A stretch of DNA of 60,584 bases, the filler included, from Platydemus manokwari (lineage: Eukaryota), in assembly GCA_037951405.1 (NCBI GenBank). It is 5 parts of 5 records of this genome, joined end to end, with 100 filler letters (N's around TTAATTAATTAA, not from the genome) between each part and the next. Parts side by side here need not be neighbours in the genome. Positions count along the whole stretch, not along the records: positions 21,390 to 30,201 come from JBBMOY011346205.1; 4 more parts are not named here. One strand, 5' to 3'. The position numbers were made by a program, and so were the translations under genes. Position 1 is the first letter of the stretch. Every line of letters starts with the position of its first letter. Under the pieces are notes generated by a model. It was not told where the DNA came from. It ran no database searches and was given only the letters and a program-made list of their open reading frames with translations. This document shows positions 21,390 through 30,201 of this stretch, piece after piece.

Positions 21390-21460
<71 letters not shown>
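21390..21460. repeat. (TAT)n microsatellite at a contig edge
   Basis: Perfect tat repeat next to the gap. Confidence 0.97.
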
Positions 21461-22487
21461 TCGATTAATCTTTCTTCCATTTCTTAACAAATGTTATATA
21501 TGAAATTGCGAGGAATTTTATGGATAACGATAAAATGTGACTGCTAGTAATATTATTATTTTTCTAACAAATCCTCGAATTCACAGATTCATTAACTTAT
21601 GAACTAACGAATAAGATGATCAACAGATTAGTGAATTGTGGCAAAAATTTGGAAATAAAAATAGAGATAAAATTTTAAAATACTCGGAAGTGAAGGGGTT
21701 GTCATATAATTCAGTAGTATTACAGCTATTATTATATCTCAACAACTTATGTATCTCAACCATCTGGAAGGGAATTGAAAAGCCGTAATAGCACTATTTT
21801 TATCGATTTTGTTATTTGATATTTTATAAAATCTAACATTAACAACTCTTTTCTCAATTCTTCCAATGTAATTTTTATGTTCGTTATCTTATCATAATAT
21901 TACTTAATCAGCTAATAATATTGTCATATCATACTTTTAACAGCTTTTTCAACTTCAACATAAAATACAACAGACGATTCCTTTCTGTTAGATTGATTAA
22001 TAAAATCGCCAAACAATATCGACTGTTCAGAAAATTATTATTAAAATTAATTGGTTATTTATATCATGACAAAACAATAACAATGAAAGACTCGATTTTT
22101 AATCGTCTTTGACTCAAAATCAATTATGGTAAAATAGAATATATCAGACGATGATTAATATTATAATTAAAAATCCGAATCTTGCAGAATCAAAACTCAA
22201 TCTTTCCAAAGCATCGTGTACAATGGATAAATAATTAACTAAATTTTTATAATTAAAATTTAAACAGAAATTTTTAATAAAAAAAAATCATTACAGCTTT
22301 CAAAGATGGAAATAAAAGCAAAATTTTATTCATGATATCGTCTATAATTTATAAAAAGAAATCAATAGCTTATTGATATTGATAAAATCGATAAATGGCT
22401 TTATTTCGAATTTGACTTTAATTATGTTATTTTATGGAAATATTTGGTGAATTCTCAGGAGCCTTTTCGTTCCTTGGGAAATTGAAT

Positions 22488-22531
22488 CCAATCAGAGAGA
22501 AGTTTGTTTGTAAGAATTCGATATAAATAGT
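22488..22531 (+). promoter_or_regulatory. Putative CCAAT box and TATA box of the prohormone gene
   Basis: ccaatc at about 22488 and tataaata at about 22522, roughly 45 nt upstream of the ATG at 22570. Confidence 0.55.
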
Positions 22532-22569
22532 CGACTAATGTCCACGGGAAAAACCCATTAAACAGAAAT

Positions 22570-23177
22570 ATGATGTTTGTTTTTCTCTTGTTAGGATATG
22601 TAAGGATTATTATTTTTATTTAATTAATTTTAGATTCATTTCTTTTCTTTTAAAATGATTGATTCAATTATTCTATTATTATTAGCAACAACTGATTCAA
22701 ATACTTTTACAGCTATTAATTATCGTTTATTTAATAAATCCTATGCAATACACATGTCATTACACTCGTGGCCGCCATATTTCCTATTATAGTATTTATT
22801 TCTGATATCTAAGAATATTTTTTTTCAAAATTTTCAAAATAATTAAAAGAAAAATAACAATTTTATCAAATTTTATTGGTATAAAAAGTTCCTTTGATTT
22901 GGAAAATAATATGTTGATACTTTTATATTCCATGATATTCGTGGGGATAGTTTTAGTAATATACAAATTACAATTTGAAAAATATTATTCTTTTCAGATT
23001 ATCTTTGTTCAAGCTGAAAATGGACAACCTGAATACATGGATAGCTTGTATTTTCCTTATTCGAAAACCGGTAAACGTTTTGCCGATTGGAAAAGAATAG
23101 CGGATTGGAAGAGATCTGACATATATCTCAACAGATTACACAAGATTCTTAAAGGATCATCATTATCTGACTTTTGA
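22570..23177 (+). CDS. Two-exon secreted neuropeptide prohormone (69 aa)
   Basis: Exon 1 22570-22599 (MMFVFLLLGY, donor gtaagg) joins exon 2 22998-23177 (acceptor ttttcag) in phase 0. Product: MMFVFLLLGYIIFVQA-ENGQPEYMDSLYFPYSKTG-KR-FADW-KR-IADW-KR-SDIYLNRLHKILKGSSLSDF. It has a signal peptide, three KR sites and a GKR amidation signal. Confidence 0.85.
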
Positions 23178-25449
23178 ATGGAGATTGAAAATGTTAATAG
23201 AAAATAAAATCCTATAATTAATCGATCAATATTCGGTCTTTTGTACATCTGTTTTGCAAATATATTGCCATCAATTTGAAAATAATCGAATTATTTACCT
23301 AATAAATCATTAAAAATACCGGAGAGCACAAATTTGAAATTATGATAACCGTCGATATATATATAGCGATGATTAATGTAAAGACGTATTAAATATTCTG
23401 ATATTCGTAATTATAAATCATGAATATTTATTCTGAAATGACTACCGATCGCAACAGTGAAAAAAGAAAATGAAGAAAAAAGAAAAAAAAATTGGTTTTA
23501 AATTAATGACAAAATATTGATAACATGTTAGGTGAAATTAACAGGATAAGTTATCAATCGTACTTTTATAATTTTACATGTGTTTATAGTTTATCTATCT
23601 TTGTATGGAATTATCGAGCTTTTGAAGGTATTGGAAACACAATCTTTATGAATCATTGGACAAAACGCGAAATTAATCTTAAATTAGGGTTAAATGGATT
23701 TTAACAATAATTCAAAACTATTATTATTAATAATGATAGTAATTGTTGTATTTCTTACTATTTGGTATTATTTGATATTATTATTATTATTATTGATCAT
23801 ATTATTAACTAGTAGACTTAAACATATAACGTAATTATTACTAAACGTTCAGAATGAATTAATCTTATAAATCTTTATAATAGTTTTTCTTTATTCATTA
23901 GCTTCGTCTTTGCAACATGTGTTGTTTAACATATTTTTTTTTATCGTTTGTTATATACGGATTTTTTACCAGATTTATACATATTTTTAAACATATTATT
24001 TGGTTACAAATGCTTGTGTATGTTGAGAGATTTGAATCAATTGAGAGTATTGGCGAAACGGAACACGGCAAACTTTATGATGAAAATTACGACTATAAAG
24101 TTAGTGAAGTTTCTAATGCTATGAATGAAAGTCATCTAAGAATCTTAACATTTCAAAATCTTCGGTTTCTTGTATGCTTATAATAAACTTGAAATTAAAA
24201 TCTGAACGTGGAAGTCTTCACAAAATGAGGCCAGGGACACACCTTGTATTTATATATAATAATAAATCAAATAATACCTGATAGATGATTTTTTTTAAGT
24301 TAAATCTAATATTCGTGAATTAAGACTAGATACACTGGTGGGTCTGTTTACAATTTCTTCACTACAACATCAGATATTTATTAAAAATATTATTTCGCAT
24401 ATATGTTTATCTTTGTTGCTTCGGATGATTTATTTTAAATTTTTTATATATTTTAGTTTTTTATTAATTACTGCCATTAAATTTCACTACGGGTAATTTT
24501 TGTTTATTTGAGAAAATTCTTTTATTCTATTTTGCTAAGGATTATTTATTTATGGAATTTGTATATTATGTTTGATTAAGAATTTACCAATTCATAATAA
24601 TAATTTGTTCATAACTGGGATAACGGAACCAAGAAAAAGACAAAGATGAGAAATAGAAATCATAATTTACAGAATAAAGAAATGTTTTCGGATAAAAAAT
24701 AAAGAAATTATTACTGTGAAACGATTCTGAGTTTGGTTACTGTAACAATTGTCAACAAGAGACTCCAGCTACAGACGTAAATCATTTCTGTGCCTTACAA
24801 GTCTCTAAGAGCGACGTATTGTTAATAAATATTTATTATTTTTGTTTGATCCACGGAATATATATTTTATATTTGATTAAGAATTTACCAGTTAAAGATT
24901 ATGTATTTTTATGTATTAGAATTATTCGATTAAAATATTTTATTTACTAGGGTTATCGGAAATTTTTTAAGATTTGGCTTATCAGATATTACTTCTACTT
25001 GATAAAAACTGCTTAAGATTTTTCGGTTATTGCTAGACTAATTCTGATATCTAAAAATTTTTTATGCCGAACTGTTGGGAGTCCAACCCGATCACAAGCA
25101 TACATTTAATCCTGTACATAGCACAATTACGGGCATAAAAGATGCCTAGTAACATACCCACATATGCCTTTGCCTTTGACTATGGATGGGAAATGCACCC
25201 AAGTTTAAACCCAGTTCAATTCAGAATTAGAGCATGCCTCAATCCAAATTGTCAAATTGTCAAAAAAACATTTATTGCTGCTTCGAAACTTCGTGTGACA
25301 ATTTTATGATAATGATAACTCTTATGTTTTAAGTGTAATGACAATTTTTATGTTTTATGTGTTACGATTAACAATAATGACAATTTTATGTTTTACACAA
25401 TTTGATGTCTTTTATAATGTTATCTTTTATAATTTAAGGAAGTGGGGGA

Positions 25450-26110
25450 GAAAGGTTGGCAGATTTTAGGAATAATAGAGTAGCCACACAATGAATAATA
25501 AATGTAATGATATGCTAAAATCATAATAAAATATATATTAAACAAAAAATAAATATAATATTTTGTCAGAATTATAATGAAATATATATTAAAATATAAA
25601 TAGCTATAATAGAATAAAATAAAACATTGTCAGAAGTATTATATATATATATATATAAAAGTTATAATAGAACGAAATCACATAAGAAAAAAGAAAGCAT
25701 GATAATATTTTAAAATACTTCAAAACAATAACAAGTTAAGACACGAATATGGAAATGAAAAGCGGACGCCGTCAACAAAAGCCGAGTGGACTACTAAAAA
25801 TATTATCGCGTGGGACGGCACAGCACGGTATAAATACCAAAATGAAATCAGATCCGAATACACTCTCCAAAATCTGATCACAATGATAACTGATTTGCAA
25901 ATAGAAACAGAACACAATATCGATAAACAAATCATTACTCAGAAAACGAAGTGATATATCTTGAACTAAGTGAGAATACATTATGAAAAACTTATTGCGG
26001 AAGTGAAATCAACAGACCCAGCTAAACTCGAGGAGCATTATTTTTCAGCAGAAATTTGCTATGAAAAGGAATTTCGATAACTGGGCGGAGTAAGGATAAT
26101 TTAATTGTTA
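25450..26110 (+). mobile_element. Solo-LTR-like repeat, related to 32135-32630
   Basis: Both begin ttggcagat, continue through an A-rich ataataaaat region, a GC-richer patch and tataaatacc, and have similar tails (gcggaa...tttttcag...cgga.taag). Confidence 0.45.
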
Positions 26111-26282
26111 CACTAGTCATCATCTCATCTTTTCACCTTAACTTTTAATTTCTTACATTCTATTACTAAAGATAATTCATTTATATTTAATATTTGCTAT
26201 TGATAACCTATCGTAAACGTATCATTACATTAATAATTACTAAACTGTATGATAACTGTTGAGTTATAAATCTGCCAAATTT

Positions 26283-26390
26283 ATCTCCTATTTATTAGAC
26301 CTCTTCTCCGTCCACTTCGGATTTCGCTGGCTACTTGCCGGACAACTGCTCATATTTTTTGTGTTAATCACTTCGACTAGTGTGCCTTTT
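26283..26390. repeat. Dispersed repeat, also at 32790-32905
   Basis: ctatttat...ctccgtc..ttcggatttcg..ggctacttgc...tcacttc.act.gtgt is present at both sites. Confidence 0.8.
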
Positions 26391-27386
26391 TGTACATGCA
26401 TGGTAATTGTCTTCCGACTTTTGGATTTAATATCTCATAGAAGATACGCATAATAAAATATATAGATTGGATAGCACTCTGTTAAATTGGAACGGTTAAT
26501 TGATTAACTTCAGATTTCAGCGTTAATAGACCAGTTCCTCATCACTATTATTTTTAATTCGGTTAAGATATTCATCATCTTAGCCTTACTAAAACCTTTA
26601 GACAACAACAGTAATTGTTTTCCGATAACCTGGTCCTAATACCCGTTATTGAAGTCCCTTAAGAGCCAGTATAGGAATAAAATAAACCAACCCAATAAAA
26701 TATTTAATAGAATAATCGACCTATTTTAATTAGCTTTAAAATAAATTTAAGTAGTAAAATTGTAAAAATAGTTTTCACTTAAACCTAACCTTAAATAATA
26801 TTGCACTTCATTTCTTATTAAAAGTTTGAGAAGACTTTTAAAAGTTATATAGATATTTTGAATGATAAAAAAAGTGTTGTTTAATGAAAAATATATTATG
26901 AAAAATTATAGTTAAGTTTCTTGATAAATCAACTTGGAATTTTAAATTATAATTATTAAAGAACTAAGAATGCTATTTATTTATTTGGCGTTAAACAGTC
27001 AAAATAATATTTATAATAAACATAAGAATAGAAAGCCAATTTTGTTTTTACAACAAATCATTTTAAATTTGTACTTTTAATTAATAAGTAATATATTTTA
27101 TAAATAATTCTATTTTTATTTAATGTTTACCTATATTATTAACTGAAGGAGATTCAAATGCTGTATTGACATGATTATTGAATAGGTGACTTAATAATTC
27201 ATGTAACGGAAATGTTTTGAGACATCACAACATGTTTTAATAACGTGACTCTAAATGATGATTTAAACACGAGTTTCCTGCTAATATGGACAAGATACTT
27301 TCATTATAGTTAATGGAATAAAATCACGATTAAGACATATGTGGAAATAATTTATGGATTAGCCTTTAAACTGAAATCATATGTTA

Positions 27387-27413
27387 TTATATATATATAT
27401 ATATATATATATA
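27387..27413. repeat. (AT)n microsatellite
   Basis: Dinucleotide run. Confidence 0.9.
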
Positions 27414-28559
27414 ATAATTTAGCATTACCTGATTTGATTATTTATATTAAACGATTTGTCTTTGAATAAATATTGTGAGAATATTTTCTTTTAATACTGA
27501 TTATTTTAGTTTTCTATCAATGAAAATGGATCAACAAACTATATTAATATTGGTACAACGAATTTTCGAAATTATGTGAAGTGAAGTACTGCATGCGATA
27601 GGTCCGGGGGAATTAAAACCGAAATTTAAATTTTTTATGGTTGTAGTGAAATATATTGTCATAAGATAAATAAATAAGACTGCGTTGATATCAAGAATGA
27701 AAATTAAGTTATTGGGTAATAAAAGTTGTTGTAAAATATTTTAAAGAAATCCTTATTCTTAGAGTAGAGCTTAAAATAAGTTGAAATGATTTCAGTAAGA
27801 TGATTTACTTATATTTAAAATCTTTACGAAATGATGGACGGAAACTAGCTCATTTGTCACAAAAATAAAAGGAAATATGAGTACAAACAGAAAGACTTTT
27901 GTACAGAAATAAGAAAGAACACATGGGCAATATTGCAGAGTATTCAAATAACGAATAATAGATATTCCTAGGATAGTCTTTAGATTAAAGTGACAGAAAG
28001 CTAATGGAAATTAATGACAAAAACAACTTGCAAATAATAATTACTAAATAATAATAATAATTACTAAATAACATTATAATAGACTTTTCAAGGTAATGAT
28101 TTAGTATAAATTCTGCAAGTTGTCAAAAAGAACGATTTAATAGATAAAGAAAGACAAAATGGAGATTATAAACAACAAATCATTAACCAAGTGATAAAAT
28201 TAATTGATTAATTGATTTATTGAAAACTTTATTATGAGAAAATTTAGAGCGAACACGTGCTCATCAATTGATATGAAAAAATTAAAAATAATTAAAACAA
28301 ATAGTCATAGAAATATTTTTTATATGTGTTAGTAGAAGCTACTTCTCTTGAGATTGGTGTTACAACAAAACAACTCATTATTACGATTTTCTTAATATTT
28401 TTTTAATAACCAATCAAACATTTTTCAAAAAAATTTCCAGAGATCTTTTTTGTCAATCTTAATCAGATATAGATTAAAAATATTTAAATCATTTAATTAC
28501 TTTATTTTAAACAATCAAATATAAATTTCAAAATATTAAATTTTAAAATATTAAATTCT

Positions 28560-30050
28560 AAAACTGATTAAAAAACTGATTCGGACCTTGGAACCTTTGG
28601 TTAAGCACTTTAAACCTTTGCATGCCTACACAACCATACACTCATGACAACCAGCCAATCACACGGAGTTAGATGGTAAGCGGTAATTAGAAAAAGCTAC
28701 ATAGCCACACAATAACACACACATAAGGATTGACCAACCTAACTCATGCAAAAAAATGTCCAATAGGAACACGAAAAAGCAAAGTTCGAATCAAAATGTG
28801 ATACAACATGAAACAAAAAATTACACACAGATCTTGAATATAAATATAGATTTAAAAATGGCCAACTGCCAGTTGAAAACCAGTTTTGTTTCTATTTTGA
28901 GAAGTATGTTGAGTGTATTAATTTTATGATTTGCACTAAGTAGTACACGGTTGAAAATAAAATCAGTCTTGTAGTTTTTGGAGTCAGGGATTAGTCATTT
29001 GTTTAGAAGTATACCAACATTAATAGGCTACGTAATTAATATACAACGCCTCTGTGATTATTTTTGTTTTAAAAATAAACAGTCTTTGCAATCAAGTAAG
29101 TTAGTTGACTTATTACAATCGGTGTTATCTTACTTTAATTCGAATATGTTTTTGAATGTTATCATGGTTATGTACTATATACTTTGGAAATTACAAAATT
29201 TATATTTTAATATAATTTCTATAATGATTCTGCAATTAACGAATTCATAAATTTTCACTACATCATTACTAGTGCCATTTACCTTCAGATGATTAATGTA
29301 ATAAAAATGATGTTATGTTGATCCAATCAAATAAAGTAAAAATGTGCATTATAATAAAATAATTATTTTCTTTACCCTTAACATACAATTGTCATAATGA
29401 ACTTAAAAAAGACTTAATTCCGCAGTACAATATCAAATTATGTCTCCTAAATTAGTGATCTAGTTCTTGGAAAATTAATGATTGCTTTAAACATTTAATC
29501 TTGAAAGCACAGCATAAAGATGACATATAAAACACGATTTTTTTTAATAAAAAAGATAAAAAATTCTCATTTTTTAATAAAAATTGTCAATAAAGTTTTA
29601 AAATTGCAATAATCTATTTAATTTTAATAAATTTAATTAAATTGGTAGATAATGACTTCGTCAAAATAAAAGTGAAATTGTGTTTTAATTAACGATTTGT
29701 TTTTAATTTGATGCTGCGGTTTGAATATTTACATGAAAAGGGTCTTTGAAAGCTTATTATCAATTTTATGTCAATTTGAAAGTAAATTTTGATGCTTAGC
29801 CATTTATAATATTTTAATTGAATTATTTAAATTGTTACTAAATTTGCTATAATATTTTATCATATTGATGTCATGTTTTCAATATTTGGTATAACAATAA
29901 AGGTCTGTAAAGCTTTCAATTCTGTTATTTATTTGTTTCTATATTTAATGATATTAGTTTAAAAGTTTTATACTAAATTTAGACTGATGACGTGGCGTTA
30001 AAAACTGATTTTTTATAAATTTTATTAATATAATCTGAGTTAGTTTAATT
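28560..30050 (+). mobile_element. Decayed Penelope-like element
   Basis: Leader with catgacaac and ccaatcac, RT-like remnants near 29000-29170 (tataccaacatt = YTNI; LLQSVLSYF), and CTGATGA at 29984. Confidence 0.4.
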
Positions 30051-30201
30051 ATATTATTTAATCGTATTTAGCACTTTTTATAAAATGCCATTTGTTAGTT
30101 TTTATTAGTAATAAAATCCTTGAATAATCGTGATTAGTTATTTAATGGGAATATAATAAAGCATTAAAATTAGTCATTGATAAAGAAAATTATTCAGAAA
30201 T

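What the first reader, a model, noticed from the sequence alone, without database searches (positions are those of the whole stretch)
22570..23177. Hidden 69-aa neuropeptide precursor releasing FADW/IADW tetrapeptides and an amidated ...FPYSKT peptide
Seen: a TATA box, a 30-nt first exon and a 398-nt GT-AG intron together build a clean signal peptide (..VQA/E). It is followed by ENGQPEYMDSLYFPYSKT-GKR, FADW-KR, IADW-KR and a 20-aa tail. Known: KR is the prohormone-convertase site and G-KR signals amidation. I do not recognise non-amidated xADW repeats among the named planarian npp/spp prohormones; they are at most distantly reminiscent of Trp-terminal Wamide/APGW-type peptides. Inference: a candidate novel neuropeptide signalling system of the size that gene predictors miss.
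Basis: partly seen in the sequence, partly recalled or inferred. Interest (0 to 1): 0.78.

Follow-up and report, generated by a model that had tools for sequence, protein, structure and literature searches.

The report
Conserved small FADW/IADW secreted-peptide precursor gene
A tiny two-exon gene for a 69-residue secreted precursor is really in the sequence, and its two four-residue peptides FADW and IADW are identical in one distant relative, so it is probably a real, uncatalogued peptide-hormone-like gene, though no RNA data exist to prove it is expressed.

Summary
Exon 1 is 22570-22599, a GT-AG intron of 398 nt follows, and exon 2 is 22998-23177. Together they encode 69 aa: a hydrophobic N-terminus ending VQA|E, then ...SKT-GKR, FADW-KR, IADW-KR and a 20-aa tail.

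It is more than chance:
- The open frame is the longest in the 8.8-kb piece.
- Exon 2 has 34% G+C, against 21% in the intron.
- Three KR pairs are seen where 0.14 are expected (P about 4e-4).
- A first exon this good arises in at most 0.6% of simulated upstream regions.

The decisive result is the exhaustive protein search, which found one relative (P0001, 82 aa, E 1.3e-5 across 1.84 billion proteins). Its similarity starts at the predicted splice acceptor, KRFADWKRIADWKR is 14/14 identical, and both proteins end in SLSDF followed by the stop. The spacers between these blocks are diverged.

Several things remain untested. No RNA run holds the locus, so splicing, expression and neuronal identity are open. 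The organism could not be identified, so "planarian" is unverified. The motif is absent from the Schmidtea mediterranea prohormone tables and from searchable full texts.

Verdict: a probable new family of prohormone-like precursor.

The parts
22522..22529 (+). TATAAATA, a candidate TATA box 48 nt upstream of the ATG
   Evidence: TATAAATA occurs about 0.5 times per kb per strand in this piece, so its position is suggestive only.
22570..22599 (+). Predicted exon 1 (coding part): MMFVFLLLGY, the first half of the signal peptide
   Evidence: It is the best of 14 candidate first exons, with chance at most 0.6% in simulations. It is not confirmed by RNA or by the relative, whose contig is too short.
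22600..22997 (+). Predicted phase-0 intron, 398 nt, GTAAGG...TTTTCAG, G+C 0.21
   Evidence: In-frame translation of its 3' end shows no similarity to the relative apart from SFQ, which is the pyrimidine tract plus CAG read through.
22998..23015 (+). Start of exon 2: IIFVQA, the end of the signal peptide, with predicted cleavage after VQA
   Evidence: The relative has ISYIHA followed by E, so the hydrophobic stretch, the small residue at -1 and the Glu at +1 are kept. Hydropathy falls sharply after this point. No SignalP run was possible.
23016..23078 (+). N-terminal spacer ENGQPEYMDSLYFPYSKT plus GKR (Gly + dibasic site)
   Evidence: It is poorly conserved, and the Gly is replaced by Tyr in the relative.
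23079..23114 (+). Tandem 18-nt units encoding FADW-KR and IADW-KR, the conserved core
   Evidence: KRFADWKRIADWKR is 14/14 identical in P0001. The two DNA units differ at 4 of 18 bases, and ADWKR is kept through two synonymous changes, GCC/GCG and AAA/AAG.
23115..23177 (+). C-terminal tail of 20 aa ending SLSDF, then the TGA stop
   Evidence: SLSDF and the stop position are conserved. The relative has an extra KR just before ASLSDF.
23203..23208 (+). AATAAA, a candidate polyadenylation signal 26 nt after the stop (a second lies at 23301)
   Evidence: The motif is common here (3.9 per kb per strand), so this is weak evidence.

Best explanation
This is a real single-copy, two-exon gene for a 69-aa secreted precursor of the prohormone type.

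Inferred steps:
- The signal peptide is split by a phase-0 intron and is removed after VQA.
- In the regulated secretory pathway, a PC2-type convertase cuts after the three Lys-Arg pairs, and a carboxypeptidase trims the basic residues.
- This releases the two free-acid tetrapeptides FADW and IADW, or the decapeptide FADWKRIADW if the middle site (Ile at P1') is spared.
- A variable N-terminal spacer and a C-terminal piece ending SLSDF are released as well.

The conserved xADW pair, and perhaps the SLSDF end, are the functional products, most likely acting as intercellular signals on a receptor.

Shown: the sequence anatomy, its statistical oddity, single-copy status, and protein-level conservation in one relative that begins at the acceptor. 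Inferred: the position of exon 1, secretion, cleavage, and a signalling role.
For: The anatomy was confirmed.

Statistics: it is the longest open frame in the piece and shows a G+C bump. KR is enriched with P = 3.7e-4. Exon 1 is the best of 14 candidates and rare in simulations.

Conservation: phmmer against 1.84 billion representatives gave P0001 with E 1.3e-5 and 41 bits. Pairwise BLASTP gave 2e-17. The alignment starts at SFQ|I, the acceptor, even though both open frames continue upstream. The core is 14/14 identical, SLSDF plus the stop are identical, and the spacers are about 30% identical with conservative swaps (F/Y, V/I, E/D). High identity within the bioactive peptides and variability outside them is what is described for neuropeptide precursors (PMC4200219, read).

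P0001's own N-terminus is not hydrophobic, so in that species too a signal peptide must come from an exon further upstream.

The DNA depth of 7-11 over the gene is close to the 7-20 of most bins outside the repeats, and a run contig over 22639-24318 is identical to the window, so this is not a repeat or transposon.

Non-amidated peptides, including one ending in Trp (1020HH-1 YSYLKGGIRW) and acidic Trp-containing ones (EYE53), were detected by mass spectrometry in S. mediterranea (PMC2953531 supplement).
Against: No RNA evidence exists. The only run holding the locus is DNA-like, so the splice, transcription and tissue are unknown.

Only one relative exists in 15 billion proteins, it is a singleton on a 1049-nt contig, and its DNA could not be fetched. 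This means no dN/dS and no check of exon 1.

No SignalP or NeuroPred run was possible. The n-region has no positive charge. From my own knowledge of convertase site preferences, Ile at P1' of the middle KR is reported as disfavoured for dibasic cleavage.

Hydrophobic N-termini are cheap in DNA with 25% G+C. Free-acid tetrapeptides are unusual neuropeptides.
Confidence: 0.62

Rival explanations
1. Exon 2 is a real coding exon, but the gene model is different. One option is that the first exon is ATG 22911 to 22955, joined over a 42-nt intron (GTAATA...CAG), which gives a 21-aa signal peptide. Another is that exon 1 lies elsewhere. A third is that exon 2 is the last exon of a longer protein.
For: One search lists MLILLYSMIFVGIVL|GTAATA as the next-best candidate with a long hydrophobic run. 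The frame is open back to 22806. No RNA decides between the models.
Against: Its donor is weaker, 4 of 8 against 6 of 8. In the relative the matching upstream stretch (METIYVK, then NSRYFLHLYINSFQ) is not hydrophobic and not similar, so a short-intron model fails there.
Confidence: 0.17
2. It is a real secreted precursor but not a neuropeptide. The peptides would be made by gland or epidermal cells as a pheromone, defence or antimicrobial peptide, or toxin-like product. Alternatively, the conserved basic/aromatic block works uncleaved.
For: Nothing here shows neuronal expression. Signal peptide plus KR processing is shared by many non-neural secreted peptides (established knowledge). Relatives are very few, which fits a fast-evolving lineage-specific secretory gene.
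Against: The pattern of identical short KR-flanked repeats with diverged spacers is the pattern described for neuropeptide precursors (PMC4200219). Tetrapeptides are too short for membrane-active antimicrobial action (inference).
Confidence: 0.15
3. It is a chance open frame in AT-rich non-coding DNA, and the reader assembled the prohormone look from common motifs.
For: TATAAA, AATAAA, Lys codons and hydrophobic codons are all frequent at 25% G+C. Other open frames of about 90 codons exist in the piece without any homologue. No RNA is available.
Against: The homologue is significant across the whole library, with boundaries that coincide with the acceptor and the stop. There is also the KR excess, the G+C bump and the exon-1 simulations.
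Confidence: 0.04
4. The coding strand is the opposite one. The 63-aa frame 23248-23057 (-) has its own hydrophobic N-terminus and reads LFQSAILFQSAKR over the repeat.
For: One search lists this frame. Third codon positions of the two frames coincide, so the synonymous changes between the two 18-nt units do not tell the strands apart (reading).
Against: The relative's called gene is in the + frame, with the same stop position and a conserved C-terminus. Its similarity is bounded by a + strand acceptor, and it shows conservative replacements in the + frame. The + frame is twice as long.
Confidence: 0.02

Closest known systems
Achatin-type precursors (molluscs, annelids, nemerteans): tandem KR-flanked free-acid tetrapeptides G-F-x-D
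   Same: The architecture is the same: short acidic, non-amidated tetrapeptides released from between dibasic sites (PMC4200219: GFWD, GFGD). The first copy, FADW, shares the letters F-A-D with achatin-I GFAD (that sequence is from my own knowledge).
   Different: The defining N-terminal Gly-Phe and C-terminal Asp are absent. Here the peptide starts with F or I and ends in Trp, and the second copy has Ile rather than Phe. No sequence relative among achatin precursors was found in the exhaustive search.
Schmidtea mediterranea non-amidated prohormones 1020HH and eye53 (Collins et al. 2010, PMC2953531)
   Same: They are small precursors of about 80 aa with a signal peptide, KR/KK sites and free-acid peptides. 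1020HH-1 peptides end in Trp before KK/KR with no Gly, and EYE53 peptides carry acidic Asp-Trp motifs such as AVVDPADWDWEI.
   Different: Those peptides are 8-13 residues long and show no recognisable similarity by eye. None of 12 motifs from this precursor occurs in the paper's sequence tables as part of a matching protein. They did not appear in the homology searches.
Trp-amide families (APGWamide, MIP/Wamide, planarian npp-5 ...DMPWamide)
   Same: They have a C-terminal Trp and repeated short units between dibasic sites (npp-5).
   Different: Those precursors have Gly before the basic pair, which gives a Trp-amide. Here Trp is followed directly by KR in both species, so the products are free acids.

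Membership tests
Prohormone / neuropeptide precursor (general class) | N-terminal cleavable signal peptide | tested here: inconclusive
   There is a hydrophobic run of 14 residues, V at -3, A at -1 and a sharp hydropathy drop. The exon-2 half is conserved in kind in P0001. No SignalP run was possible, and exon 1 is unconfirmed by RNA.
Prohormone / neuropeptide precursor (general class) | Several dibasic sites that flank short, repeated peptides | tested here: met
   GKR, KR and KR are present, with KR 22-fold above expectation. All three KR pairs are conserved in P0001.
Prohormone / neuropeptide precursor (general class) | Conservation concentrated in the peptides, with variable spacers | tested here: met
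   The core is 14/14 identical and SLSDF is 5/5 identical, against roughly 30% identity elsewhere. This rests on one relative only.
Prohormone / neuropeptide precursor (general class) | Expression in neurons or endocrine cells, with processed peptides detectable | not testable with these tools
   No RNA run holds the locus, and there are no peptidomic data for this organism.
   The Gly is present here (T-G-K-R) but replaced in P0001 (T-Y-K-R), and the surrounding spacer is diverged.
Achatin family | Tetrapeptide motif G-F-x-D | tested here: not met
   The peptides are FADW and IADW. The achatin motif was taken from PMC4200219.
Wamide / APGWamide-type | C-terminal Trp followed by Gly + basic site (Trp-amide) | tested here: not met
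   W is followed directly by KR in both copies and both species.
Catalogued S. mediterranea prohormones (Collins 2010) | Sequence present in Tables S2-S5 | tested here: not met
   ADWKR, DWKR, YSKTG, FPYS, LSDF, FADW, IADW, NGQPE, YLNRL and FVQAE are all absent. ADW and DWK occur only in the unrelated EYE53-2 and npp-5. Later flatworm catalogues such as Koziol et al. 2016 were not available.

The most novel reading that the evidence does not exclude
FADW and IADW are the ligands of a so-far undescribed peptide signalling system that uses free-acid, Trp-terminal tetrapeptides. The system would have its own receptor and would be restricted to a poorly sampled animal lineage. It would have been missed because the gene is a 210-nt, two-exon reading frame and the products are lighter than usual peptidomic mass windows.
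Probability: 0.3. Interest if true: 0.6.

Novelty: new member of a known kind. Interest (0 to 1): 0.48.

Why it matters
Small prohormone genes are routinely missed by gene predictors, and each new peptide family adds a testable ligand for orphan receptors. This case gives a concrete candidate: two tetrapeptides held identical across a divergence that erased most of the rest of the precursor. The architecture (free-acid tetrapeptides between KR pairs) has few precedents, achatin being the main one.

If the host is a flatworm, the peptides could be synthesised and tested at once on behaviour, regeneration or reproduction, and on receptor panels. If the gene is not expressed, or the products are not signals, it is only one more lineage-specific secreted peptide.

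Tried and rejected
- RNA evidence: the run search found one DNA-like holder and no RNA. Laying it gave only DNA contigs.
- The word-index protein search with exon 2 alone was blank. With the two-sequence profile it returned only P0001.
- P0001's contig DNA could not be served, and its cluster has one member.
- Scans of JGI metagenome, GTDB genome and IMG/VR contigs with the profile confirmed no relative.
- Pfam found nothing for exon 2. Among nine neighbouring open frames the only hit was one weak sub-threshold match to SPMIP1.
- Rfam found nothing.
- A neighbouring 90-aa frame has no homologue, so the organism could not be named.
- The bacterial promoter/terminator scan is irrelevant here.
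- Paper searches for the motifs and for the ENA accession found nothing relevant.
- The full spliced 69-aa protein was not submitted to any tool because it has no reference. Exon 2 was used instead.
- EYE53 and 1020HH sequences were compared by eye only, not by alignment, to avoid typing long strings.
- I first took the synonymous differences between the two 18-nt units as evidence for the + frame. I rejected this because the antisense frame shares third positions.

Full report
**Observation**

The piece given to me is 21390-30201.
- ATG ATG at 22570 opens 30 nt that encode MMFVFLLLGY.
- The next bases are GTAAGG.
- The 398 nt from 22600 to 22997 end in ...attattcttttcag.
- From 22998 the same frame, in phase 0, reads IIFVQA-ENGQPEYMDSLYFPYSKT-GKR-FADW-KR-IADW-KR, then a 20-aa tail ending SLSDF, with TGA at 23175-23177.
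- TATAAATA lies at 22522 and AATAAA at 23203 and 23301.

**Is it more than chance?**

In DNA this AT-rich, stop codons are dense, yet the frame 22806-23177 is open for 123 codons. That is the longest open frame in any of the six frames of the piece. Exon 2 has 34% G+C, against 21% for the intron and 25% for the flanks.

KR occurs at 0.0026 per residue in the six-frame translation of the piece. That predicts 0.135 in the mature part, and three are seen (P = 3.7e-4). TTTTCAG occurs twice and GTAAG six times on the + strand in 8.8 kb.

I listed every ATG that runs open to a phase-0 GT in the 1.6 kb upstream. In 3000 order-2 Markov simulations per length, a candidate as good appeared in 0 to 0.03% of upstream regions. 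With relaxed thresholds it appeared in 0.4 to 0.6%. I chose the thresholds after seeing the data, so these figures show rarity and are not exact probabilities.

**Relatives**

The word-index search with exon 2 was blank. The exhaustive phmmer search of 1.84 billion representatives gave one real hit, P0001: 82 aa, E 1.3e-5, 41 bits. A second row, a 4132-aa protein with no aligned stretch, I take as spurious.

P0001 reads ...NSFQ-ISYIHA-ES...TY-KR-FADW-KR-IADW-KR-...RKR-ASLSDF and then stops. Three features go beyond the score:
- When the whole unspliced frame of the window is compared with it, the alignment begins at SFQ|I. That is the pyrimidine tract plus CAG of the predicted acceptor read through. 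It does not extend upstream, although both frames stay open there.
- KRFADWKRIADWKR is 14/14 identical. The five C-terminal residues and the position of the stop are also identical. The rest is about 30% identical, with conservative replacements.
- P0001's own N-terminus is not hydrophobic, so in that organism too a signal peptide has to come from a further exon. Its contig has only 58 nt upstream of the call.

P0001 is a singleton from ENA assembly ERZ27256860, and its DNA could not be served. No further relatives turned up in JGI metagenomes, GTDB genomes or IMG/VR.

**Copy number and expression**

The only public run that holds the locus is a short-read DNA data set of 2024. Its contigs cover the gene at depth 7-11, close to the 7-20 of most bins outside the repeats, and one contig over 22639-24318 is identical to the window. 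The stretch from about 25100 to 26700 reaches depth up to 580 with many variants and is a dispersed repeat. The gene is therefore single-copy and not part of a mobile element.

No RNA run was found. Splicing, transcription and tissue therefore remain untested. This is the main gap in the case.

**What it most likely is**

High identity within the peptides and variability outside them is what is described for neuropeptide precursors (PMC4200219). That pattern is seen here: short KR-flanked repeats are conserved and the spacers are variable.

I therefore read the locus as a real two-exon gene for a secreted prohormone-type precursor. The following steps are inferred:
- Signal peptidase cuts after VQA.
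- A PC2-type convertase cuts after the KR pairs, and a carboxypeptidase removes the basic residues.
- The conserved products are FADW and IADW as free acids, or FADWKRIADW if the middle site is spared. Ile at P1' is reported as unfavourable, from my own knowledge.
- A C-terminal piece ending SLSDF is also released. In the relative it is set free by an extra KR.

The Gly is a Tyr in the relative and that segment is diverged, so it is more likely a spacer.

**Rivals**

1. A different first exon. The next-best option is ATG 22911 to 22955 with a 42-nt intron. It has a weaker donor, and the matching region in the relative is neither hydrophobic nor similar.
2. A secreted but non-neural peptide. 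This cannot be excluded without expression data.
3. A chance frame. The homologue and the statistics make this unlikely.
4. The antisense 63-aa frame 23248-23057. Its third codon positions coincide with those of the + frame, so the synonymous changes between the two 18-nt units (GCC/GCG, AAA/AAG) cannot decide the strand. The shared stop, the conserved C-terminus and the + strand acceptor boundary favour the + frame.

**Comparison with known families**

The motifs ADWKR, DWKR, FADW, IADW, YSKTG, FPYS, LSDF and others are absent from the sequence and mass-spectrometry tables of the S. mediterranea prohormone study. ADW and DWK occur only in the unrelated EYE53-2 and npp-5. ADWKR occurs in one unrelated protein-design preprint, and KRFADW and KRIADW occur in none of the roughly 8.4 million searchable full texts. 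The motifs are also absent from the two neuropeptide papers I opened. Supplements of other papers and the later parasitic-flatworm catalogue were not available.

The closest in architecture are three groups:
- Achatin-type precursors release free-acid G-F-x-D tetrapeptides. The defining motif is not met here.
- Trp-amide families require Gly before the basic pair, which is absent in both species.
- Planarian 1020HH and eye53 precursors show that free-acid peptides, Trp-terminal in 1020HH-1 and Asp-Trp-containing in EYE53, are made and detected in a flatworm. They are not similar in sequence by eye.

I file it as a new member of the prohormone kind, not as a member of any named family.

**Limits**

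- The organism could not be identified. The fact that only one run holds the locus argues against a heavily sequenced model such as S. mediterranea (inference).
- The full spliced protein was not submitted to tools because it has no reference.

**Verdict**

My estimates are:
- About 0.8 that exon 2 is a constrained coding exon.
- About 0.6 for the full prohormone reading.
- About 0.3 that FADW and IADW define a new signalling system.

Noticed in passing
window 25100-26700 (also 24022-24209): This is a dispersed multi-copy repeat. Contig depth in the DNA run rises from about 8 to 100-580, with dozens of variant letters, small indels and many joints. It has slightly higher G+C (0.30-0.32), only short broken open frames and no real Pfam match (one frame gave a weak sub-threshold hit to SPMIP1). 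It is probably a decayed mobile element.
   Followed up: partly
window 25497-25611 and 25310-25362: Tandem repeats of 51 nt (2.3 copies, 78% match) and 26 nt (2 copies) lie inside the multi-copy region.
   Followed up: no
window 21390-21460: A perfect (TTA)n microsatellite of about 24 units lies at the very edge of the piece.
   Followed up: no
window 23057-23248 (-): An antisense 63-aa open frame overlaps exon 2. It has its own hydrophobic N-terminus, and its third codon positions coincide with those of the + frame. It is treated as a low-probability rival.
   Followed up: partly
window 22911-22955: Inside the predicted intron, an in-frame ATG opens a hydrophobic stretch (MLILLYSMIFVGIVL) followed by GTAATA. 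With a 42-nt intron it would give an alternative signal peptide. It is not matched in the relative.
   Followed up: yes
window 28978-29250 (+) and 23917-24183 (+): Two further open frames of about 90 codons, unusually long for this composition, have no Pfam match. The first also has no homologue in the word-index search. The second overlaps a repeated stretch.
   Followed up: partly
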